A stretch of DNA of 64,000 bases from IMGVR_UViG_3300041411_000129:62001-126000, one strand, 5' to 3'. Positions 48,287 through 57,898 are shown, counted from the first letter of the stretch. Made by a program: numbers and translations. The notes: generated by a model not told the origin, from the letters alone.

Positions 48287-48883
48287 ATGGGATCTAAATC
48301 AACTCCTGGGTTCTATGTGATTAAGCATAAACCATCAGGTCATTACTACGGCGGTTCTACCCATTCTGTAATTCAGAGGATCGGCCGCCATAAATCGTTC
48401 CTAACTCGTAGAGAACATCCTAACGAGAAACTGCAAAGTATTTTTACCTCATGGGAAGATATCACTATCACCGTGACGGCTACCGATGATCTTGAAGAAG
48501 CTCAAAGATTGGAGCAAGAGTTCATAAACGAACATTTGAATAAAGAACTGTGCTGCAATGTCGGTACTGGCTCCTCTAGCGTTTGGGCTAAAGGTAAAAT
48601 GCCAGAACACATGAAGGATAAAATCCGTAAGGCTAACACCGGTCGGATATTGTCTGATGAGCATAAAAGAAAAATAGTTGAATCGTTCAAAAATAGTACA
48701 GGGTATGTCAACGCTAGGATCGCAGCTAGAGAGGCATGCGGAAAGAAAGTAAGCATACGCGGTGTAGTTTACCCTAGCGTCAAGGACGCCTCCGTTAAAT
48801 TAGGACACACCCGGCCGACTATCACTAGAAGAATAAATTCCGGCAACCCAAAATACAGTAATTGGTTCTGGGTTGCCGGGTAA
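48287..48883 (+). mobile_element. free-standing GIY-YIG homing endonuclease with NUMOD3 and NUMOD1-like DNA-binding modules
   Basis: GFYVI...YYGGS...R..H...E..FI...N; HMKDKIRKANTGRILSDEHKRKI; YPSVKDASVKLG HTH; more AT-rich than its neighbours. Confidence 0.85.
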
Positions 48884-48902: not shown

Positions 48903-49742
48903 TCAGTATCGAGGTCTTGCACCGAGAGACAGCTTAAGGATTTTACGCTTAAGCTCTTGGTCTGCAAGCATCCCGACTTTCTTCCAATCCACGTTGAGGT
49001 AATCCATGTACATCTGGTCAGCATCTGCGTAGCTGTCGATAATCTCCCGGATACGTCCGAGACTTGCGCCAGCTCGAATCTGACCTTCATCCAGATCAAT
49101 GATCAGGTTGTTGTAGATGTACGCCTTGACTGCACGGAAGACGAGTTCCGCAAACTCTGAGTAGTACATCGGGTCGAGGTTGTTAAAGTTCGCCTCGTGG
49201 GACACACGACACCGTACTGCACCGTCACCGACCAACTGGTTGATGTCGTTGACTAGGATGGTGTTAATTCCTACGAGTTGAACGTATGCTGTACCCATTA
49301 CGGTACTGCCGCTAACGGCCCGCATGATGTCACGACCAACCATGAGCATATCGCCAGCACGACGATCGAAACCTGAGTTAGTACTGCTACTCAGGCCTTG
49401 AGTCAAACCGTAGATAAGTTCATGGACAGTTGTGATGTTCCGACCACCCAATGCTTCACGGGGGAATCGGTACACTACGTTGTAAGCATCGATGAAATCA
49501 ACTTCCGCAAAACACAACGGAAGGAACATTTCAGTACCAGAGTTCAGGTTGACATCGATTGCGACACGAGCCTCAATAACGAGTTCGCGGATACGCTGAT
49601 CAATAGACAGCCCATTGACGTTATCGAAATAACGCTCTTGGCGTGTTGGGTCGTAACGCTTTGGCATGAATGCTTGCTTCAAGATATCCGGTGGAATACC
49701 GTTCTTGACACGCATGATCGCCACTGTAACCGGATCTGACAT
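48903..49742 (-). CDS. conserved chimallivirus hypothetical/structural protein
   Basis: GGAGG RBS; IPPDILKQAF and AVKAYIYNNL; divergent from phuZ. Confidence 0.7.
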   Translation of the reverse strand: MSDPVTVAIMRVKNGIPPDILKQAFMPKRYDPTRQERYFDNVNGLSIDQRIRELVIEARVAIDVNLNSGTEMFLPLCFAEVDFIDAYNVVYRFPREALGGRNITTVHELIYGLTQGLSSSTNSGFDRRAGDMLMVGRDIMRAVSGSTVMGTAYVQLVGINTILVNDINQLVGDGAVRCRVSHEANFNNLDPMYYSEFAELVFRAVKAYIYNNLIIDLDEGQIRAGASLGRIREIIDSYADADQMYMDYLNVDWKKVGMLADQELKRKILKLSLGARPRY

Positions 49743-49825
49743 AACGAATCCCTCCAATAGGACTCAAGTGATTTCGCTTGAAGCCTCTTACCATTGTTGC
49801 ACCAACCATCCATTAGGAGCTGTAC

Positions 49826-50833
49826 ATGTCTGAAGTAATCAACACTGGCCTGATCAACGTTCGTCCTCGCACTATCCGTTTCTACGCCTGTGGTGGTACT
49901 GCAATCAACCAACTGCGAGCATACCGCGATAACCATCCTGGTGAACCGCGTCTGCATGGCGACGAGAAATACAGCTACATCGATACCAGCTTCGCCAACC
50001 TCGATGGCGCGCTGATGTCCGAAACCTTCACCCTGAAAGAAGCCGATGGTTCGGGTTCCGACCGGAAGAAGAACGCCGCGCGTATCGTGGGGGTACTTCC
50101 TGAAATCATGTTGGCTCACCAGCCTGCTGACTTCAACGTCGTTATCTTCTCCCTGTCTGGCGGCACTGGCTCCGTGGCCGGCCCGATCATCCTGAAAGAA
50201 CTGCTGGCCAAAGGTCACAAAGCTGTCGGCGTTACTTCCGCAGCATTCACCTCCGGCAAGAAATCCTCCAACGCCATCGATACCCTGACTGGCCTGGAGT
50301 TGGCTGTTGCGTCCGTCGGCCGTCCGGTTGTTCTGAGCTACACCCCGAACGATCCGAACAAAACCGATTCCGACAACAACATCAAACCACTGTTCGTTCT
50401 GCAAACCCTGGCCAAACTGGCGAGCGGCAAGAACGGCCATCTGGATTCGTCCGACGTGGCGAACCTGTTCGACTTCCACACCGTAACCAACTACAAGCCA
50501 TCGCTGGCTCTGCTGGATGTGTACGCTGGTGAAGAACAGTTGAAGTCTGACGTTACCAGCGCCATCGGCATTGCCGGTCTGCTGAAAGATCGCACCAGCG
50601 TCATGCCGGCTATCAATGCCGCTTATGACACTGTCGGCTACCTGCCTGAAGACAATCGTGAATTCGCCAACTCCTTCTACTTCGTCGTGTCCATCGAGAA
50701 GCTGAACGGCGTTGTCAAAGACATGAACGATCGTAAAGCTCAGGCTGAACTGAAAGAACGCGTCACCAACACCGTTTCGACCCTTGCTACCGCAGGCGTT
50801 ATGGTAGATGAAGCAACCGGCCTGGTCTTGTAA
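49826..50833 (+). CDS. phuZ: phage tubulin PhuZ
   Basis: ACGGTAIN, IDTS, GSGSDR and the tubulin signature SLSGGTGS; HLDSSD T7 loop. Confidence 0.95.
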   Translation: MSEVINTGLINVRPRTIRFYACGGTAINQLRAYRDNHPGEPRLHGDEKYSYIDTSFANLDGALMSETFTLKEADGSGSDRKKNAARIVGVLPEIMLAHQPADFNVVIFSLSGGTGSVAGPIILKELLAKGHKAVGVTSAAFTSGKKSSNAIDTLTGLELAVASVGRPVVLSYTPNDPNKTDSDNNIKPLFVLQTLAKLASGKNGHLDSSDVANLFDFHTVTNYKPSLALLDVYAGEEQLKSDVTSAIGIAGLLKDRTSVMPAINAAYDTVGYLPEDNREFANSFYFVVSIEKLNGVVKDMNDRKAQAELKERVTNTVSTLATAGVMVDEATGLVL

Positions 50834-50847
50834 GACCTGAGCCGTTA

Positions 50848-50884
50848 ATAAACTGCGGGGCCAAGTGCCCCGCAGTTTATGCCC
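50848..50884 (+). terminator. hairpin terminator
   Basis: ATAAACTGCGGGGC-CAAGT-GCCCCGCAGTTTAT-GCC. Confidence 0.8.
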
Positions 50885-50907: not shown

Positions 50908-51129
50908 ATGGCTGTAAATCTGAACATGCGTTTTGTCTGTGACCATTGCGGTAACGTAGACGACCTGCATTACACTCATCAATCTGGCGGTAATGGTTTC
51001 GAATGCCATCGTTGCAAGTTTGGTACATGGCACGGCTATTTCAGCGAAGATAAATACGATGAAGTCCACCACGTCTGCACCAACCGCGTCAATCCATATT
51101 TCAATGAAGACGGCTCCCCTAAATTCTGA
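50908..51129 (+). CDS. small zinc-finger protein
   Basis: GAGGT RBS; CDHC...CHRC. Confidence 0.75.
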   Translation: MAVNLNMRFVCDHCGNVDDLHYTHQSGGNGFECHRCKFGTWHGYFSEDKYDEVHHVCTNRVNPYFNEDGSPKF

Positions 51130-51139
51130 TAGGGGTCAC

Positions 51140-51190
51140 GAACGCTAGGAGATCCGTAAAACGATCTCCTAGTGGCGTTCTTTCTTTTTT
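51140..51190 (+). terminator. intrinsic terminator
   Basis: CTAGGAGATC...GATCTCCTAG stem plus a T run. Confidence 0.8.
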
Positions 51191-51300
51191 GTTATCACGG
51201 TATTCATTTGTATTCGAAACGGCTTCTATGCAGCTCGTAGAGCCTTGTAGATGTATTTATCTACAAAACGACCTAATCATGTAGGCTATAGGGGACACGT

Positions 51301-51693
51301 ATGTTTGAGAATCTACGACTGCCGGACAAAATCTTAGATGAGCGAAACTTCACTGTCGTTGATATCAGTGAACAAGTGGAGTTGCTCAAGCGTCATGGTA
51401 ATTTCCATCCAGATGTGATGGAAGCATGGATGGCCCGTGGATACGCCAAGAATCATGGTGTCGCCACTGTAAGCGCCAGCCTGTTCGAAAGACCTGGACA
51501 ACAAACCGCGTTCGAAAGAATGCAATTGAGCGTAACGGCGACAGAGATCGGCCTGCGTCCAGTTGACTTCCTTCCAGAGCCGGAAGACGATTGGCTAGAT
51601 GAGTGCGGTGTTTGGTTTTACGTTCGTGGATCGTACTTAGCAATGGGGAATAGCCGTGCTATTGAAAAATGTTGGCGACGACTGCGTAATTGA
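51301..51693 (+). CDS. hypothetical protein, first gene of a coupled operon
   Basis: GGGG RBS; ORF track. Confidence 0.7.
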   Translation: MFENLRLPDKILDERNFTVVDISEQVELLKRHGNFHPDVMEAWMARGYAKNHGVATVSASLFERPGQQTAFERMQLSVTATEIGLRPVDFLPEPEDDWLDECGVWFYVRGSYLAMGNSRAIEKCWRRLRN

Positions 51694-52108
51694 TTTCTCA
51701 GAGATCAGCGACAATTTCTTCGGCGAGGCTACAAGGTTCACAAAGGAGCCGACGTCTCGAGATAGACGGAATGTCGAACGTGTAGTGGGTGAGATGTTCG
51801 ATGACTACATGACGAAGAGCATGACTTGGACCAAGGCGTTCCACGACTTCAATGAAAGTTACTTCATCAACCGGCTGCCTAAGTGCTGTCGCGATCATCC
51901 AAATATCCGCACGGTCATCATCGATGTTTACGATGAGATCTCTGAAGTGTTGGCTGAGGTGATGGCGTTACCTACATGGTACGATGTATCAATGCGCGTA
52001 TCAGGAACTGCTATCCATCTGTCAGTGGGAGAAGACCAACGTATAGTCCAGTGGACAAAAGAGCACGCCCATGAGTATTCGACTAACTACAACGGCAAGG
52101 GATGGTGA
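51656..52108 (+). CDS. hypothetical protein
   Basis: GTG start, overlapping chain. Confidence 0.7.
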   Translation: MLLKNVGDDCVIDFSEISDNFFGEATRFTKEPTSRDRRNVERVVGEMFDDYMTKSMTWTKAFHDFNESYFINRLPKCCRDHPNIRTVIIDVYDEISEVLAEVMALPTWYDVSMRVSGTAIHLSVGEDQRIVQWTKEHAHEYSTNYNGKGW

Positions 52109-52562
52109 TGTAATCGTCCATGCTGTGGACGAATGGTACTCACGGTTCAAAGATACCCTTGACCTTGATAATACAGAGCTGCGGGGGATGGATACAAAAG
52201 TTAGGACGTTGATCGTGAATGTCGTTGACACAATCATCAACCCTACCGAGTCCTCCATTTATCAGCTAGCGGTCAGAGCAACCAATTCTCGAAAGGCGTA
52301 CACCACGCTTCTAGAACAGTTGGTCGAGTTCGACCACGAAATGCGTGAGCTGGTTAAGATGTGTCACGATCGTAAATGCGACGTGACTGGTGTAACCATC
52401 CCACATGACAAACTTATACTTGTCTTCCATATGGAAGATACTCGGAGGCCAGATGAAACTGGATTTGAAACTTATATCGAATCTTGTCGAAGAAGCGGTG
52501 AATACGTCCACCCAGAACTCGACAAGCAACTCAGGCTCTGGAGAAGTATCCGCGGCGCCTAA
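52071..52562 (+). CDS. hypothetical protein
   Basis: Overlapping chain. Confidence 0.7.
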   Translation: MSIRLTTTARDGDVIVHAVDEWYSRFKDTLDLDNTELRGMDTKVRTLIVNVVDTIINPTESSIYQLAVRATNSRKAYTTLLEQLVEFDHEMRELVKMCHDRKCDVTGVTIPHDKLILVFHMEDTRRPDETGFETYIESCRRSGEYVHPELDKQLRLWRSIRGA

Positions 52563-52992
52563 CTATTCGTATAAGTACGTGATCGTTGACGTCGGTGACT
52601 TCAACATGACTGACATATCCGAAAGTACGCTGATCGATCCGGGTGCTCTGCTGAAAGCTGTATTGAAGTACGAGTTCTGGGACGATGACTTCGACTTCAA
52701 GCATCTGTCTCAGGACATCCCAGATCCGTCTGAAGGCAACGTATCGCTGGCACTCGACACTTGGTACGCCGAGAACGTAGAACGCCTGCATGACACGTTT
52801 GAGTTCCTGCGTGATGTTCGCCCGGCTGTCGTTAGCGACTGCTTGATTGTACACGGCCAATGCCTGATCGAAATCTGTAAGGCATTGTCTCCTGAGGCCC
52901 AACTCGAATTGGACGACCCAGATCTCCACCTCGAGCCAGCCACTGATCTGGACGAAGAAGATCTTGACGTTCCGGAAGATGGTGATGAATGA
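52453..52992 (+). CDS. acidic hypothetical protein
   Basis: GGAGG RBS before ATG 52453. Confidence 0.7.
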   Translation: MKLDLKLISNLVEEAVNTSTQNSTSNSGSGEVSAAPNYSYKYVIVDVGDFNMTDISESTLIDPGALLKAVLKYEFWDDDFDFKHLSQDIPDPSEGNVSLALDTWYAENVERLHDTFEFLRDVRPAVVSDCLIVHGQCLIEICKALSPEAQLELDDPDLHLEPATDLDEEDLDVPEDGDE

Positions 52993-53396
52993 AGCTAGGC
53001 AAGGGGACAAGACGTACCCTTATCGTGGATATCGACAATGAGTTCCACGAAGCGCTGATACGTCTTGGTGACCATGTCCCCAACTATGAGCGCAACCAGT
53101 TCATCCAGTACACCGCAAGCATTCTGTTAATGTCGTTGTTGATGTGCGATAGAGATGGTGCCGTTGATGCATTTGAACGCATCACCTCTCTCGCCCACAT
53201 CTCTGACATGAAGAAGCATGCGACTATCTGGGGTGAGTTCTTAGCCCTGGCCAACTACTTCCACAACCACTACTATCACCATGACGAATTGATCAGAGAT
53301 CTTGAAGACATGATGCCGAAGCATCCCAAGGAATTCCCTGAGTTGATCTTCGAAGTAGAGGTTGCGGACAAAGGTGGCTATCTGAAGGTGAGTTAA
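52989..53396 (+). CDS. hypothetical protein
   Basis: ATGA coupling. Confidence 0.75.
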   Translation: MKLGKGTRRTLIVDIDNEFHEALIRLGDHVPNYERNQFIQYTASILLMSLLMCDRDGAVDAFERITSLAHISDMKKHATIWGEFLALANYFHNHYYHHDELIRDLEDMMPKHPKEFPELIFEVEVADKGGYLKVS

Positions 53397-53834
53397 ATGA
53401 CTACCGAAAATGATTCAATCAGGATTATTGCTGAGATTGATTCACACGGCAGCCATTACTTATTCAAGATCGCTGATGACTTGCAGAAGATGCCAGACTT
53501 TGAGGGCGAATGCTCTGATTATCTGGCATCGCTGGTTCTCAGCTCGATCATTGATTATTGGTGCTTAGCGGATATGGACGAACTGTCCTACATCCTAGGC
53601 GCTTGCGATGAGTACGACGATCAGGAAATAGGTCGCCGAACTAAGCGCAATATAATGGATCTGTCGAAAGCCGATCTGGATGACTTCCCAGATTTCTACA
53701 ACACCAAGTTAACTCTCATCGACATTGCACAGGAACAAGAAAGGAAGGGTTGGAAGAAGTATCGGTTCACTGAACCAGAAGTTAACCCCAACCGGAAGTT
53801 CTTTGTAGTCTGGATGGAAAAGATCTTAGATTAG
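53397..53834 (+). CDS. hypothetical protein
   Basis: Abuts the previous stop. Confidence 0.75.
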   Translation: MTTENDSIRIIAEIDSHGSHYLFKIADDLQKMPDFEGECSDYLASLVLSSIIDYWCLADMDELSYILGACDEYDDQEIGRRTKRNIMDLSKADLDDFPDFYNTKLTLIDIAQEQERKGWKKYRFTEPEVNPNRKFFVVWMEKILD

Positions 53835-53843
53835 GGAGGTCAG

Positions 53844-54161
53844 ATGTTGGAAGCGGAACAGTTTGTTATTGAGATTACACATACCCACGGCGTATCTGAC
53901 TCCGCCGTGGGTTTTATGCTGTCTAATTGGGTATTGGACTCAGCTTCTCGTAAAGAATGGTTGAGTGCTGACACGCTCATTACCCTTACCCATGACTACA
54001 ATCTCAGTATTAAAACCATTGAGAAGATGTCAGGTGACGTACTCGACGCACTGGAGGAGTGCGGGTTATATGCGCAACTGATGACCGACGATCGCAGACT
54101 CAGCTCAGTATCATGCAGGGTTAAGCGCGATGTGGCGTTAATTGATCTGGAGTGGACATGA
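53844..54161 (+). CDS. hypothetical protein
   Basis: GGAGGT RBS. Confidence 0.75.
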   Translation: MLEAEQFVIEITHTHGVSDSAVGFMLSNWVLDSASRKEWLSADTLITLTHDYNLSIKTIEKMSGDVLDALEECGLYAQLMTDDRRLSSVSCRVKRDVALIDLEWT

Positions 54162-54529
54162 AAGCAAATACGTTACCAGCAATCGCTACAAAGAGCTTGA
54201 TTGCCGTTCATAACGACTCCCTCAACAGTTTCATTAACACCGAGGATCTGTCGGAACACATCAAGGTTCTGTCTGGAATCGCGTTTGATTTCGTGCAGGC
54301 TATGCCAATCTGTCAATATGTTTATAACTGGCCGCCTGCTGAGATCATTCTTGATCGCTGCACCGGGAAGTCAAAGCTTTCCACGCTGTACAACGCTTTG
54401 TTCGATGAACTGTCTGAGAATGGATACCCTGTATCTGTCCTTATGACCATGCAGGTTGTCCAACATGTCCCAAAACGATATACCGTGCTTTCCGTCCCAC
54501 TTGCGGCGAGACTCGGGAGGCTCCACTGA
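54158..54529 (+). CDS. hypothetical protein
   Basis: ATGA coupling, GGAG RBS. Confidence 0.7.
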   Translation: MKANTLPAIATKSLIAVHNDSLNSFINTEDLSEHIKVLSGIAFDFVQAMPICQYVYNWPPAEIILDRCTGKSKLSTLYNALFDELSENGYPVSVLMTMQVVQHVPKRYTVLSVPLAARLGRLH

Positions 54530-54896
54530 TAAGGAGTTCATCGTTGTAGATATATCCGATACGGTACGGGCATTCTGCAATGAAGTTGACCGAGAAGTGG
54601 AAAGTCTTTCGTACGACATCGATGCCATCATCAGGCAGTATTCAGCTTATCGCCATGTAGGACGGTATGATGAGATCGTCACGGGTCTGTCAAACAAGTT
54701 CCTAGAACATGGTTGTGTAAAAATTGACGACGATGGACCAATAATAGCAAGAGCTGCCCTTGGTACGCTTTACCGTGGAATCACCGAACATATCCGTGAC
54801 TTAGGGTACATGATCGGAGCAGTCCACGATGTGAAGCTGAAGTTAAATAGTATCAACCGGCAGATAAGATGTAACGCAATCATGATGGTTATCTAA
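54465..54896 (+). CDS. hypothetical protein
   Basis: Overlapping chain; start uncertain. Confidence 0.65.
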   Translation: MSQNDIPCFPSHLRRDSGGSTDKEFIVVDISDTVRAFCNEVDREVESLSYDIDAIIRQYSAYRHVGRYDEIVTGLSNKFLEHGCVKIDDDGPIIARAALGTLYRGITEHIRDLGYMIGAVHDVKLKLNSINRQIRCNAIMMVI

Positions 54897-54914
54897 CCAG
54901 TACGGAGCTGCTTC

Positions 54915-55280
54915 ATGAAAAACCACTGTATCGTAGGCTACAGTCCGGGATTCTACGATTACCTGCAATCAGTGGGGTATCGTGAAGTCCCGGAACAGGT
55001 GTCCGCTGATGAACCAGACTCCCCACTGGCTTCAATCGACACACAGTTCGTAAACTGGGAACGCATTGAGTTTCTGGATTACCTGACCAATTGCATGATC
55101 GGTATCGAATCTATTGATCCGGATTATCTGGCTACCGTCGAAAGTCTCTATGAGGCTATTGATGACGATGATTTGAGACAACTGGTCGAAGAAGGTTCGA
55201 TCGAAGATTTGATATTTAATGACCGAGGCTATTACTTGGCTCGGCTGGAGAGTGTAAATGCCCCTCAACGAATCTTTTAA
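54915..55280 (+). CDS. acidic hypothetical protein
   Basis: GGAG RBS. Confidence 0.75.
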   Translation: MKNHCIVGYSPGFYDYLQSVGYREVPEQVSADEPDSPLASIDTQFVNWERIEFLDYLTNCMIGIESIDPDYLATVESLYEAIDDDDLRQLVEEGSIEDLIFNDRGYYLARLESVNAPQRIF

Positions 55281-55653
55281 AGGGAAGACGCTCAGTTTCG
55301 AGCTGAGCTCTGGTATCCGGTACACGAACTACAAGCTGCTGGCCCTGCTCGATGTGGGGACCGTTGTAGCGGTGGGGTTCCAAGCGGCTGGTGAACACCA
55401 TCAGAACTACCCGTACATGCCATCCGATTCTCCAGACGACTTCACGGCGTATGCGTATGCCAAGTTCGTCGATCCGGAGAATAAGATCCTGTATGTTGGC
55501 GTACCGTGGATCAAGGAAGGTTCCATCACCGTCCTCGACAACGTCAACTACAACTGCCTTCTCCTGAACCCAACCTCCGCCGAGCTGGAAACATTCCGCT
55601 CGATCCTGGTGGCCTCTGGGTTCGAAGGACGATTCAAGCTCACCGTAGCCTGA
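55258..55653 (+). CDS. conserved chimallivirus protein upstream of the DNA polymerase
   Basis: H.Q.YPYMP...PDD..Y.Y...VGVPWIK pattern; synteny. Confidence 0.7.
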   Translation: MPLNESFKGKTLSFELSSGIRYTNYKLLALLDVGTVVAVGFQAAGEHHQNYPYMPSDSPDDFTAYAYAKFVDPENKILYVGVPWIKEGSITVLDNVNYNCLLLNPTSAELETFRSILVASGFEGRFKLTVA

Positions 55654-55658
55654 TCACG

Positions 55659-55708
55659 CACTCCTGCCAGCCGTAAAAGGTTGGCAGGAGTGTAGCGTCT
55701 TTTTTTTT
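55659..55708 (+). terminator. intrinsic terminator
   Basis: CACTCCTGCCAGCC/GGTTGGCAGGAGTG stem plus a T run. Confidence 0.85.
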
Positions 55709-55768
55709 GTTTTGTTGAAAGATACAAACCGTACTAACAATACGTAGAGTACCTCAGAGGTTTGATTG

Positions 55769-57898
55769 ATGGCTAACGATAACCCGTTCCTCTTACCAGT
55801 AGAGGAATACAAACGTGACATCGATGTCAAGAAAGGCTATATCCAACAAGTAGCCAAGTATCTTTCACTTCAGCTCAAACTCCCTTACGAGAACACGCTG
55901 AAGTACGTCCTTAAGAAAGTAGCTAAGGGCGGCATGTTTGCATTCAAAGATCCTGCAATGCAGCAGTTGATCAAGAAAGCACGCGGTCACCGAGTTGAGG
56001 ATGAAACTACCTTCCTCGGTTACATCGAAGAGATTCGTGAGTCTGGTCGTATTGTTTCCCCATCGCTGGTGGTTTACGAGCGTCCAGAAGTAGAACGTTC
56101 CGTTACAGCTGAATGGCTGGACGATAACATCGCGGCTCGTAAGAAGTCGAAGAAAGCGATGTTTGAATTGAAACAGATCGGTGAACTGATGAAGTCTGCG
56201 CTTGCGGACTATGACCAGAACGCCCGTAAGATCCGTATCAACTCCGTATCCGGTATGCGTGGCTTTGAAGGTAACCCAATCTTCTTGGCAACCGGTCACT
56301 CCAGTCTGACATCCATGTGCCGGGCAGCAGCGGGGTACGGTAACGCCACTGTTGAAAGATTCATGGCGGGGTCGAAGCATTACCATACGCCAGAGATAGC
56401 CAAAGCCAACTTGACGGCCATCACGACTATCGAACAGATGAGTCGGGTTCAGTTGGTGATTGACGAATACAACCTCGTGTATCCAACTGTGGATGACGTG
56501 GTAGCCATGGTTGAGCGTTCTACCAGTCTGTACTGGGATATCCCTCACGAGATGGCTTTGATCCGTCAGATGGCAGAAGGGATGACTCCACTGGAGCGTG
56601 CCACCGTTTGCTACTCGGGTGACATGTACCACTTGGCTAAGTTCAACCCTGAAGTTGTTAAGAACCTGATGGGTGAGATGATTGCCATCAATATCGAAGA
56701 CATGGAAGACGTTGATACTGACGCCATCTTGATGACTGTCGATACCACGGCCATCGCTTACATCAACGCCCTGTGCGCAAACATCCTGAAAGGTAGTACG
56801 CACAAGCTGGTTAAAGAGAATAACCCGGCAGGTTGGCAGGTTATCGGTCGTACAGCACAACGCTTTAAAGAAGCCTCTGCGAAGTACGCAACCCTGATCA
56901 CTAACCTATTTGCGCCTAAGCATCTTCCGCCGACTGTAGCCGCTCTCAAGGGCATTCAGCGCCGTGTATGTCTGGCAGCAGATACCGACTCCTCCATCTT
57001 CAGTACCGAATACTGGGTTGAGTGGTATACCGGCAGCATGAAGCGTGGGGAAGTAGAGGACCGTATCTGGTATCTCGCCACCTACATGTCTTGCCAGTGC
57101 ATTGCGCACAGTCTGGCAATGTTGTCGGCAAACGTCGGTGTGGAGCGTTCGCAACTCTTCCGTCTGGCAATGAAGAATGAGTACGCCTTCCCGGTGTTTG
57201 CTCTGACCAACCTTGCTAAGCACTACTTCTCCTTCATGTCCATGCGGGAAGGTAACGTTTACGAAGAGAACGAGCTGGAGATCAAGGGTGTAGAGCTGCG
57301 CGGTTCTACTGCACCTAAGCATATCTTGAAAGCGGCTGAGGAGATGATGGAGAACATCGCTACTCACGTCAACGAAGGTCGGAAGATGAATGCGGGTAAA
57401 CTCCTGCGGTTCGTTGCCGATCACGAGATTGAAACGATCCAGTCCATTAAGCGTGGGGAATACAAATACCTGCGTTCCGCTCAGATCAAGCCGGACAGTA
57501 ACAAGATGCTTCACCACGTACTGTGGCAAGAAGTGTTTGCTCCTAAGTACGGCGAGTCTGTTAATCCTCCGTATCCATGTGTTAAGATCACTTCCGAGCT
57601 GTCTAACAAGACGAAGACTCAGGAATGGTTGGCGGGTATGGAAGATCAGGAGCTGGCCAAGCGAATGGCTGCGTGGATGGTCAAGTGGAACCGTAAAGAG
57701 ATCACTACCTTCTATCTACCAACCATGGTGATCAAGAACGGTGGTCTTCCTATCGAACTACAGGAAGCTGCAAACGTCCGGAAGTTGGCCTATCAGATCA
57801 ACTCAGGCTTCTACAGGATCTTGGAGTCTACTGGTCTTCATCTGGTGGATCGGAATAACTACCGTCTGATCTACGATTTCTTGGGACTCACTGCATGA
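55769..57898 (+). CDS. family-B DNA polymerase, polymerase subunit (phiKZ gp50-like)
   Basis: Motif B QNARKIRINSVSG, motif C ADTDSSIF, KHY and IKGVEL. Confidence 0.88.
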   Translation: MANDNPFLLPVEEYKRDIDVKKGYIQQVAKYLSLQLKLPYENTLKYVLKKVAKGGMFAFKDPAMQQLIKKARGHRVEDETTFLGYIEEIRESGRIVSPSLVVYERPEVERSVTAEWLDDNIAARKKSKKAMFELKQIGELMKSALADYDQNARKIRINSVSGMRGFEGNPIFLATGHSSLTSMCRAAAGYGNATVERFMAGSKHYHTPEIAKANLTAITTIEQMSRVQLVIDEYNLVYPTVDDVVAMVERSTSLYWDIPHEMALIRQMAEGMTPLERATVCYSGDMYHLAKFNPEVVKNLMGEMIAINIEDMEDVDTDAILMTVDTTAIAYINALCANILKGSTHKLVKENNPAGWQVIGRTAQRFKEASAKYATLITNLFAPKHLPPTVAALKGIQRRVCLAADTDSSIFSTEYWVEWYTGSMKRGEVEDRIWYLATYMSCQCIAHSLAMLSANVGVERSQLFRLAMKNEYAFPVFALTNLAKHYFSFMSMREGNVYEENELEIKGVELRGSTAPKHILKAAEEMMENIATHVNEGRKMNAGKLLRFVADHEIETIQSIKRGEYKYLRSAQIKPDSNKMLHHVLWQEVFAPKYGESVNPPYPCVKITSELSNKTKTQEWLAGMEDQELAKRMAAWMVKWNRKEITTFYLPTMVIKNGGLPIELQEAANVRKLAYQINSGFYRILESTGLHLVDRNNYRLIYDFLGLTA

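What the first reader, a model, noticed from the sequence alone, without database searches (positions are those of the whole stretch)
51301..55653. Coupled array of 11 small acidic ORFs between phuZ and the DNA polymerase, several sharing an N-terminal hhhD(I/V/F)x(E/D) strand
Seen: eleven 105-180 aa ORFs that overlap or nearly abut. Near their N-termini they share a motif followed by a predicted helix: FTVVDISE (51301), CVIDFSE (51656), YVIVDVGD (52453), TLIVDIDN (52989) and FIVVDISD (54465), with weaker IIAEIDS (53397) and FVIEIT (53844). Inference: an old tandem paralog expansion of one small alpha/beta fold. From recollection, some phiKZ nuclear-import specificity genes lie in the equivalent phuZ-polymerase interval, so this could be a diversified adaptor set for cargo import or host-protein binding.
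Basis: partly seen in the sequence, partly recalled or inferred. Interest (0 to 1): 0.62.

Follow-up and report, generated by a model that had tools for sequence, protein, structure and literature searches.

The report
Small-protein operon beside phage DNA polymerase
An uncultivated nucleus-forming jumbo phage from plant-root soils carries one operon of ten small conserved proteins plus a known polymerase partner; the two members I could model share a fold found almost only in such phages, including in a known nuclear-import adaptor, so the array may be this lineage's own import-adaptor set, but that function is untested.

Summary
The 11 ORFs are real. They are colinear in about 15-20 related phage contigs and under purifying selection. 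Terminator-like hairpins flank them and none lies inside, so they read as one operon. The last ORF (o11) does not belong to the proposed family: it is Pfam SH3DP, the phiKZ gp49 polymerase partner.

Sequence does not link the other ten. BLASTP gives E of 0.17 or worse, and profile-profile probability is at most 11%.

I had two AlphaFold2 jobs and used them on o02 and o09. Both models are confident and share one topology. In both, the motif is the end of strand 1 and the start of helix 1. Their BFVD neighbours are almost all jumbo-phage proteins, and 17 of the top 50 are shared. No PDB fold matches.

o02 is the N-domain of phiKZ gp43. o09 sits where Imp2 (gp47) sits, and its best structural neighbour is an apparent Imp2 homologue.

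Eight members remain unfolded, and no function is shown. The Imp1-o09 co-fold gave no verdict.

The parts
49826..50833 (+). PhuZ tubulin homologue, the left landmark
   Evidence: It falls in the same phmmer cluster as the annotated PhuZ of Noxifer and DT01. A terminator-like hairpin follows at about 50855-50878.
50908..51129 (+). 73-aa CxxC...CxxC ORF between PhuZ and the array; not part of the array
   Evidence: ORF. No Pfam or PHROG hit. dN/dS is 0.078 against L005.
51143..51190 (+). Terminator-like hairpin plus T-run, the upstream boundary of the operon
   Evidence: 12-bp stem followed by a T-run.
51301..51693 (+). o01, 130 aa; motif FTVVDISE with an invariant Asp
   Evidence: 16 colinear orthologues. 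The Asp is conserved in 17 of 17 aligned sequences. dN/dS 0.087. Probable DT01 orthologue PA10_00134, hhalign 84%.
51656..52108 (+). o02, 150 aa; N-terminal domain of the phiKZ gp43 / PhiPA3 gp039 family; motif CVIDFSE forms strand 1
   Evidence: hhalign 99.9% to gp43 residues 1-160. AF2 pLDDT 91.8. BFVD neighbours.
52071..52562 (+). o03, 163 aa; the fastest-changing member
   Evidence: 16 orthologues. 61% identity to L005 where the polymerase is 98%; dN/dS 0.445. SNP cluster at 52226-52388.
52453..52992 (+). o04, 179 aa; motif YVIVDVGD; acidic C-terminal tail; overlaps o03 by 110 nt
   Evidence: GGAGG four bases upstream of the ATG. 39 orthologues, including DT01 PA10_00138.
52989..53396 (+). 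o05, 135 aa; motif TLIVDIDN
   Evidence: 17 orthologues. dN/dS 0.063.
53397..53834 (+). o06, 145 aa; weak motif IIAEIDS
   Evidence: 13 orthologues. dN/dS 0.116.
53844..54161 (+). o07, 105 aa; weak motif FVIEIT
   Evidence: 17 orthologues. dN/dS 0.131.
54152..54529 (+). o08, 123-125 aa (the ATG at 54158 makes an ATGA overlap with the o07 stop)
   Evidence: 13 orthologues. dN/dS 0.093.
54465..54896 (+). o09, 143 aa; motif FIVVDISD forms strand 1; positional and structural counterpart of Imp2
   Evidence: AF2 pLDDT 84.4. Top BFVD hit is the 183-aa Psa21 protein matched by length to gp042, an Imp2 homologue. Sits second upstream of SH3DP, as Imp2 does.
54915..55280 (+). o10, 121 aa; positional counterpart of Imp4
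   Evidence: 19 orthologues. dN/dS 0.033. No sequence link to Imp4.
55258..55653 (+). o11, 131 aa; SH3DP, orthologue of phiKZ gp49, the polymerase partner; not a paralogue of the others
   Evidence: Pfam PF20287, E 3.8e-18. Found in 76 loci. Role of gp49 from PMC12571901.
55658..55709 (+). Terminator-like hairpin plus T-run, the downstream boundary of the operon
   Evidence: 15-bp stem followed by a T-run.
55766..57898 (+). Family B DNA polymerase, the right landmark
   Evidence: tblastn matches 292 jumbo-phage records; the best is 43% to pPa_SNUABM_DT01.

Best explanation
o01-o11 form one transcription unit of a rhizosphere chimallivirus (a nucleus-forming jumbo phage).

What is shown:
- Ten of the genes are distinct, conserved, fast-evolving small proteins.
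- The eleventh, o11, is the SH3DP partner of the DNA polymerase.
- o02 and o09 share one predicted fold that otherwise turns up almost only in jumbo-phage proteins: strand 1 ending in Asp, one hydrophobic linker residue, a helix starting Ser-Asp/Glu, a helical core and a C-terminal beta-hairpin.
- The same fold appears in the gp43 N-domain and, on length-based mapping of some hits, in the Imp2 import adaptor family.
- o09 occupies the Imp2 position and o10 the Imp4 position.

What is inferred:
- o01, o04 and o05 probably have the same fold, because they carry the same motif.
- The array descends from an old tandem expansion whose sequence signal has decayed, leaving only the strand 1/helix 1 junction recognisable.
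- The proteins act as small protein-binding adaptors at or in the phage nucleus. On this view they bind particular cargo in the cytoplasm and present it to the conserved Imp1 machinery, as Imp2 and Imp4 do in phiKZ.
For: - Real genes: each ORF has one colinear orthologue per locus in 13-76 loci. dN/dS against L005 is 0.03-0.17 for all but o03. Four independent metagenomes show no indels.
- One operon: terminator-like hairpins lie at 51143-51174 and 55658-55693. Within the array the scan found none on the + strand, only two weak - strand matches.
- Shared fold: the AF2 element order is E-H-H-H-H-E-E in o09 and E-H-H-(H-H)-H-E-E-H in o02, at pLDDT 84 and 92. The two models share 17 of their top 50 BFVD hits and 9 of their top 50 PDB chains.
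- Imp2 link: the hits include PhiPA3 gp044 (named in BFVD) and proteins matched by length to Psa21 gp042 and Noxifer gp041. HMM confirms all three genes as Imp2 homologues.
- Motif: unbiased test, 1 of 400. The best hhalign local alignments repeatedly place the motif in register. phiKZ Imp2 has SFVVINISD at residues 30-38 and o09 has EFIVVDISD at 27-35. A motif HMM trained only on the window's clade ranks Imp2 second among 56 phiKZ ORFs.
- Position: the o09 and Imp2 families both sit second upstream of SH3DP.
- Machinery: the genome has ChmA, Imp1 and Imp3 homologues but no sequence-detectable Imp2 or Imp4.
- Imp2, Imp4 and Imp5 are described as cargo-specific adaptors.
Against: - No pair of array families reaches significance by BLASTP or hhalign; the maximum probability is 11%.
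- No sequence link exists from any array family to Imp2 or Imp4.
- Only 2 of the 10 candidate members were folded.
- Structural matches to the apparent Imp2 homologues are modest: TM 0.40-0.47 and Foldseek E 0.005-0.06.
- Three of the BFVD-to-gene assignments rest on protein length.
- The strand-Asp-helix junction could be a common structural solution rather than a mark of ancestry.
- A crude propensity score for an N-terminal strand and a C-terminal hairpin did not separate the array from other small proteins.
- The Imp1-o09 co-fold gave no verdict.
- No expression or localisation data exist; no RNA runs were found.
- Co-transcription with SH3DP, next to the polymerase, fits a replication role equally well.
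Confidence: 0.42

Rival explanations
1. The ten proteins are replication accessory factors that work with the polymerase and SH3DP inside the nucleus. Any resemblance to Imp2 reflects only a common small scaffold.
For: They are co-transcribed with SH3DP and lie directly upstream of the polymerase, with no internal terminator. The gene order is conserved across a clade whose polymerases are only 62-74% identical. phiKZ gp49 is reported as a polymerase interactor with a strong knock-down phenotype.
Against: No member resembles a known replisome part in Pfam, PHROGs, PDB or the ESM Atlas. A strong terminator separates the operon from the polymerase gene. These proteins change far faster than the polymerase: 30-43% against 71-75% identity.
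Confidence: 0.22
2. They are unrelated lineage-specific ORFans that bind host proteins (host take-over or anti-defence). The motif is a coincidental or convergent strand-helix start.
For: Sequence comparisons among them are insignificant. They evolve fast, with mosaic dS of 0.2-1.5 and one member at dN/dS 0.445. The o09 family is narrow, with 52 clusters among 1.84 billion representatives. The crude secondary-structure score does not set them apart.
Against: Both folded members have the same topology and the same phage-restricted structural neighbours. The motif beat 399 of 400 random sets. Gene content and order are fixed across the clade, unlike typical accessory or anti-defence islands.
Confidence: 0.2
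3. Some or all of the ORFs are not genes.
For: No database family matches o01-o10. Several starts are GTG or TTG and overlap the preceding gene.
Against: dN/dS is well below 1. Orthologues are colinear at 30-43% identity. Two AF2 models are confident. Natural populations show no frameshifts.
Confidence: 0.01

Closest known systems
phiKZ Imp2 (gp47) and its homologues PhiPA3 gp044 and 201phi2-1 gp79: cargo-specific nuclear import factor
   Same: It lies second upstream of the SH3DP gene and the polymerase, as o09 does. The size is similar. The N-terminal word is similar and sits at the same distance from the start: SFVVINISD against EFIVVDISD. The best BFVD neighbour of o09 is matched by length to an Imp2 homologue, and the o02 model hits four apparent Imp2 homologues at probability 0.92-1.00.
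   Different: No significant sequence or profile similarity: hhalign 0.7-1.0% and BLASTP E 0.12. TM-scores are only 0.40-0.47. Requirement for Nlp1 import, nuclear localisation and dependence on Imp1 are all untested here.
phiKZ gp43 / PhiPA3 gp039 family (function unknown)
   Same: o02 is homologous to its first 160 residues or so: hhalign 99.9% and HMM E 9e-34. It holds the same place in the interval.
   Different: gp43 is 357 aa with a C-terminal half that the window's phage lacks. o03, the next gene, shows no similarity to that half.
phiKZ Imp4 (gp48) and PhiPA3 gp045
   Same: It lies immediately upstream of SH3DP, as o10 does. The 126-aa Psa21 protein matched by length to gp044 is a weak structural neighbour of o02, at probability 0.47.
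   Different: No sequence similarity to o10. o10 was not folded.
Pfam PF20287 SH3DP (phiKZ gp49)
   Same: o11 matches at E 3.8e-18, above the curated cut-off, and lies directly upstream of the polymerase.
   Different: Nothing notable. It is simply not part of the proposed paralogue set.

Membership tests
Imp2 (phiKZ gp47) family | Detectable sequence homology to gp47 | tested here: not met
   The Imp2 HMM finds nothing in the genome. hhalign of o01-o10 against Imp2 gives at most 5.3%, and o09 gives 0.7-1.0%.
Imp2 (phiKZ gp47) family | Gene position second upstream of the SH3DP gene and the polymerase | tested here: met
   The o09 family is at position -2 in 39 of 41 loci. The Imp2 family is at -2 or -3.
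Imp2 (phiKZ gp47) family | Same predicted fold | tested here: inconclusive
   The top BFVD hit of o09 is the 183-aa Psa21 protein matched by length to gp042, an Imp2 homologue (probability 0.93, TM 0.40). o02 hits PhiPA3 gp044 and three further proteins assigned to Imp2 by length, or for SL2 by length and kinship alone, at probability 0.92-1.00 and TM 0.45-0.47. I could not fold Imp2 itself.
Imp2 (phiKZ gp47) family | Required for import of a specific cargo, itself imported, dependent on Imp1 | not testable with these tools
   This is defined genetically in phiKZ. The Imp1 homologue + o09 co-fold returned no verdict.
gp43 N-domain family | Profile homology to gp43 residues 1-160 | tested here: met
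   For o02: hhalign 99.9%, E 1e-36, and a reciprocal HMM hit.
SH3DP (PF20287) | Pfam score above the gathering cut-off, and a position next to the phage polymerase | tested here: met
   For o11: 65.7 bits against a cut-off of 25.
One paralogue family spanning the array | Significant pairwise or profile-profile similarity | tested here: not met
   Best BLASTP E is 0.17. Best hhalign probability is 11%. Iterated HMM searches never cross families.
One paralogue family spanning the array | A shared N-terminal motif beyond chance | tested here: met
   For o01, o02, o04, o05 and o09: 1 of 400 random sets reached the array's score. The motif forms the same strand 1/helix 1 junction in both models.
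One paralogue family spanning the array | The same fold in all members | tested here: inconclusive
   Two of two folded members agree. The crude propensity test was uninformative.

The most novel reading that the evidence does not exclude
Every nucleus-forming phage may carry, next to its polymerase, a tandem array of one fast-diverging small fold. Imp2, probably Imp4, the gp43 N-domain and most of o01-o10 would all be members. On this reading, cargo selection for the phage nucleus is set by a diversifying paralogue family, and each lineage has evolved its own adaptor repertoire that sequence searches cannot recognise.
Probability: 0.22. Interest if true: 0.75.

Novelty: new variant of a known kind. 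Interest (0 to 1): 0.52.

Why it matters
Imp2, Imp4 and Imp5 were reported as conserved only in Pseudomonas phiKZ-like phages. That leaves open how other nucleus-forming phages choose their nuclear cargo.

If the small proteins at the same genomic position in distant lineages share the Imp2 fold, two things follow. They are the obvious candidates for lineage-specific adaptors. And the question becomes testable in cultivable relatives, for example genes PA10_00134 to PA10_00140 of pPa_SNUABM_DT01.

The result would also give structure-based names to many 'hypothetical' jumbo-phage genes.

Tried and rejected
- Pfam and PHROGs scans of o01-o10 gave nothing above threshold.
- Megablast of the array against GenBank phages gave no match.
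- My first hhalign run used a wrong flag and was discarded. One batch timed out.
- hhalign of the array families against phiKZ gp44-gp48, PhiPA3 gp038/040/045 and the DT01 genes linked only o02 to gp43 (99.9%), o01 to DT01 PA10_00134 (84%) and o10 to PA10_00140 (14.5%, weak).
- I tested whether o03 is the missing C-terminal half of gp43. There is no similarity.
- A profile search with the o09 family against 1.84 billion representatives found 52 clusters. None bridges to Imp2 or to another array family.
- hhalign across the families found at positions -1 to -3 extended the o09 family weakly to more distant clades (51%) but not to Imp2.
- Atlas look-ups of o05 and o01 found no model and no usable lead.
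- A Chou-Fasman-style score for an N-terminal strand and a C-terminal hairpin did not separate the array from other small proteins (p 0.33 and 0.74). My by-eye reading of a hairpin in every member therefore carries no weight.
- Complex prediction of the Imp1 homologue (L087:1495-3084) with o09 returned no verdict. It is evidence neither for nor against binding.
- The sigma-70 promoter scan found fewer sites than shuffled controls.
- No RNA runs were found.
- Paper searches for gp43 found nothing relevant.
Full report
**Context**

The window is bases 62001-126000 of a 253,921-bp IMG/VR viral contig with direct terminal repeats. It is a chimallivirus, that is, a nucleus-forming jumbo phage. It encodes a PhuZ homologue at 49826-50833 and a family B polymerase at 55766-57898. 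The polymerase's best GenBank match is only 43% identical, to Pseudomonas phage pPa_SNUABM_DT01. The genome also encodes ChmA, Imp3 and Imp1 homologues. Near-identical DNA occurs in rhizosphere, root and soil metagenomes of 19 studies. No RNA run holds it.

**Observation**

Neighbouring ORFs overlap or abut: the junctions run from -110 to +18 nt. All quoted motif instances are present.

All eleven have net negative charge, but that is ordinary for this phage, whose median pI is 5.84.

Terminator-like hairpins with T-runs lie at 51143-51174 and 55658-55693. Within the array the scan found none on the + strand, only two weak - strand matches. The eleven ORFs therefore look like one operon of about 4.4 kb.

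**Are they genes?**

Yes. I fetched 83 related loci. In iterated HMM searches each ORF found exactly one colinear orthologue per locus:
- o01, o03, o05-o08 and o10: 13-19 loci
- o02, o04 and o09: about 40 loci
- o11: 76 loci

Against L005, whose polymerase is 98% identical, dN/dS is 0.03-0.17 for ten ORFs and 0.445 for o03. dS varies from 0.2 to 1.5, which points to mosaic recombination. Against L008 the ORFs are 32-42% identical while the polymerase is 75% identical, and o06 gave no tblastn hit there. Four independent metagenomes show SNPs but no indels, with a SNP cluster in o03.

**Identities found**

- o11 is Pfam PF20287 SH3DP at E 3.8e-18 and the orthologue of phiKZ gp49. gp49 is described as an SH3-domain interactor of the phage polymerase with a strong knock-down phenotype (PMC12571901). 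It does not belong to the proposed family.
- o02 is the N-terminal domain of phiKZ gp43 / PhiPA3 gp039 (hhalign 99.9%).
- o04 and o09 have orthologues in the DT01 clade, PA10_00138 and PA10_00139. o01 probably does as well (PA10_00134, 84%).

**Are they paralogues? Sequence evidence**

Sequence comparison gives no significant link. The best BLASTP E among them is 0.17. The best profile-profile probability is 11%. No HMM search ever crossed from one family to another.

Even so, the best local hhalign alignments repeatedly put the N-terminal motif in register:
- o01 16-31 with o09 27-42
- o02 8-60 with o09 27-67
- o04 57-66 with o09 27-36
- o01 16-33 with o02 8-25

An 8-mer search that knew nothing of the motif chose FIVVDISD of o09 as the best shared word. 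It scored 90, against 72.9 +/- 4.5 for random sets of 11 small proteins, and 1 of 400 reached 90.

The Asp is invariant in the o01 family and is the commonest residue at that position in the o02, o04, o05 and o09 families.

Leave-one-family-out scans ranked the held-out member 6th to 11th of 275 proteins for four families, and outside the top 12 listed for o01. The E-values were not significant.

**Are they paralogues? Structure evidence**

Only two AlphaFold2 jobs were available. I used them on the two motif-bearing families with the deepest alignments.

| Model | Mean pLDDT | Elements in order |
|---|---|---|
| o09 | 84.4 | E24-29, H31-44, H52-57, H68-81, H88-112, E118-128, E133-142 |
| o02 | 91.8 | E9-13, H15-25, H34-55, H67-71, H76-79, H84-102, E109-116, E119-127, H128-140 |

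The plan is the same in both: strand 1, a helical core, then a C-terminal hairpin. The motif does the same job in both. The strand ends at the Asp, one hydrophobic residue links, and the first helix starts Ser-Asp/Glu.

**Link to the import factors**

Imp2 is phiKZ orf47 and Imp4 is orf48. PhiPA3 orf44 is an Imp2 homologue (10.1101/2024.03.27.586873). All lie between PhuZ and the polymerase. Imp2, Imp4 and Imp5 are called cargo-specific adaptors, and imp2 and imp4 lack transposon insertions.

Several BFVD hits correspond to Imp2 homologues:
- PhiPA3 gp044 is named as such in BFVD.
- The 183-aa Psa21 protein matches gp042 by length.
- The 167-aa Noxifer protein matches gp041 by length.

My Imp2 HMM confirms gp044, gp042 and gp041 as Imp2 homologues, at E 9e-62, 8e-68 and 9e-46. 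The Psa21 protein is the top hit of o09 (probability 0.93, TM 0.40). The o02 model hits all three, plus a 178-aa SL2 protein that I take to be Imp2 from its length and SL2's kinship to phiKZ alone, at probability 0.92-1.00 and TM 0.45-0.47.

Other hits match by length the genes at the o01 and Imp4 positions of Psa21. In several phages the hits have adjacent accession numbers. This suggests tandem arrays of this fold in many jumbo phages, although I did not verify gene adjacency.

The o09 and Imp2 families both sit second upstream of SH3DP. phiKZ Imp2 carries SFVVINISD at residues 30-38 and o09 carries EFIVVDISD at 27-35; BLASTP aligns these regions at E 0.12. A motif HMM trained only on the window's clade ranks an unannotated phiKZ ORF just upstream of gp43 first, and Imp2 second, among 56 phiKZ ORFs, at low scores.

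No profile method links any array family to Imp2 or Imp4. The genome has no sequence-detectable Imp2 or Imp4.

**Function**

Nothing here tests function. The co-fold of the Imp1 homologue with o09 returned no verdict.

My preferred reading is small adaptors that present cargo to Imp1. It rests on fold, position and the presence of the core import machinery.

A replication-accessory role fits the operon structure equally well. A host-binding role fits the fast evolution.

I put about 0.7 on o02 and o09 sharing a phage-restricted fold with the Imp2 and gp43-N families. I put about 0.5 on most of o01-o10 sharing it, and about 0.3 on an import-adaptor function.

**Novelty**

The interval, its small genes and Imp2/Imp4 are known. 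I found no report that the gp43 N-domain, Imp2 and the unrelated-looking small proteins at the same place in distant lineages share one fold. The papers I searched describe these proteins as lacking predicted functions and as restricted to Pseudomonas phages.

The claim is modest and rests on two models and on moderate TM-scores.

Noticed in passing
window 52071-52562 (o03): o03 changes much faster than its neighbours. It is 61% identical to L005 where the polymerase is 98%, its dN/dS is 0.445 against 0.03-0.17 for the others, and eight of the SNPs seen in other metagenomes fall at 52226-52388.
   Followed up: partly
window 52453-52562: o03 and o04 overlap by 110 nt in different frames. The conserved C-terminal helix of o03 lies over the poorly conserved Ser/Thr/Asn-rich start of o04. 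A similar overlap appears in L008.
   Followed up: partly
L009:15900-16328 (phiKZ NC_004629 35899-36327): A 142-aa ORF between gp42 and gp43 is not annotated in the RefSeq record, yet it has homologues in Psa21 (gp038), Noxifer and other phiKZ-like contigs. It starts with LYVVDVTRV and holds the position that o01 holds here.
   Followed up: partly
window 50908-51129: A 73-aa ORF with two CxxC pairs (zinc-ribbon-like) lies between PhuZ and the array, with a terminator-like hairpin on each side. It is conserved (dN/dS 0.078) and matches no family.
   Followed up: no
window 50875-50884 and genome-wide intergenic regions: The word CTTTATGCCG and close variants are enriched: 69 matches with up to two mismatches against 43 expected in the window, and 6-7-fold enrichment of its 7-mers in intergenic DNA. 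It may be a phage promoter. One copy sits just before the 73-aa ORF. Upstream of o01 there is only a poorer version (CTTCTATGCAG).
   Followed up: partly
window 48287-48883: A GIY-YIG homing endonuclease with an I-TevI-type DNA-binding domain lies next to a DUF7484 gene (48903-49757, - strand), upstream of PhuZ.
   Followed up: no
window 52905-52992: o04 ends in a strongly acidic, probably disordered tail (about 30 residues, mostly Asp/Glu/Leu/Pro). Its pI of 4.05 is the joint lowest in the array, with o10.
   Followed up: no
window 51908-51931 (o02 residues 85-92): o02 has a second copy of the motif word (VIIDVYDE). In the model it lies inside a long helix, so the word alone does not mark a strand.
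   Followed up: yes
G000, outside the array: Six of 81 contiguous blocks of 11 genes elsewhere in the genome scored as high as or higher than the array in the shared 8-mer test (maximum 115). Other paralogue clusters probably exist in this phage.
   Followed up: no
window 51100-55800 in run X4: One rhizosphere run holds the whole stretch in a single contig at word depth of about 519, with 16 substitutions. This suggests a bloom of a near-identical phage in that sample.
   Followed up: no
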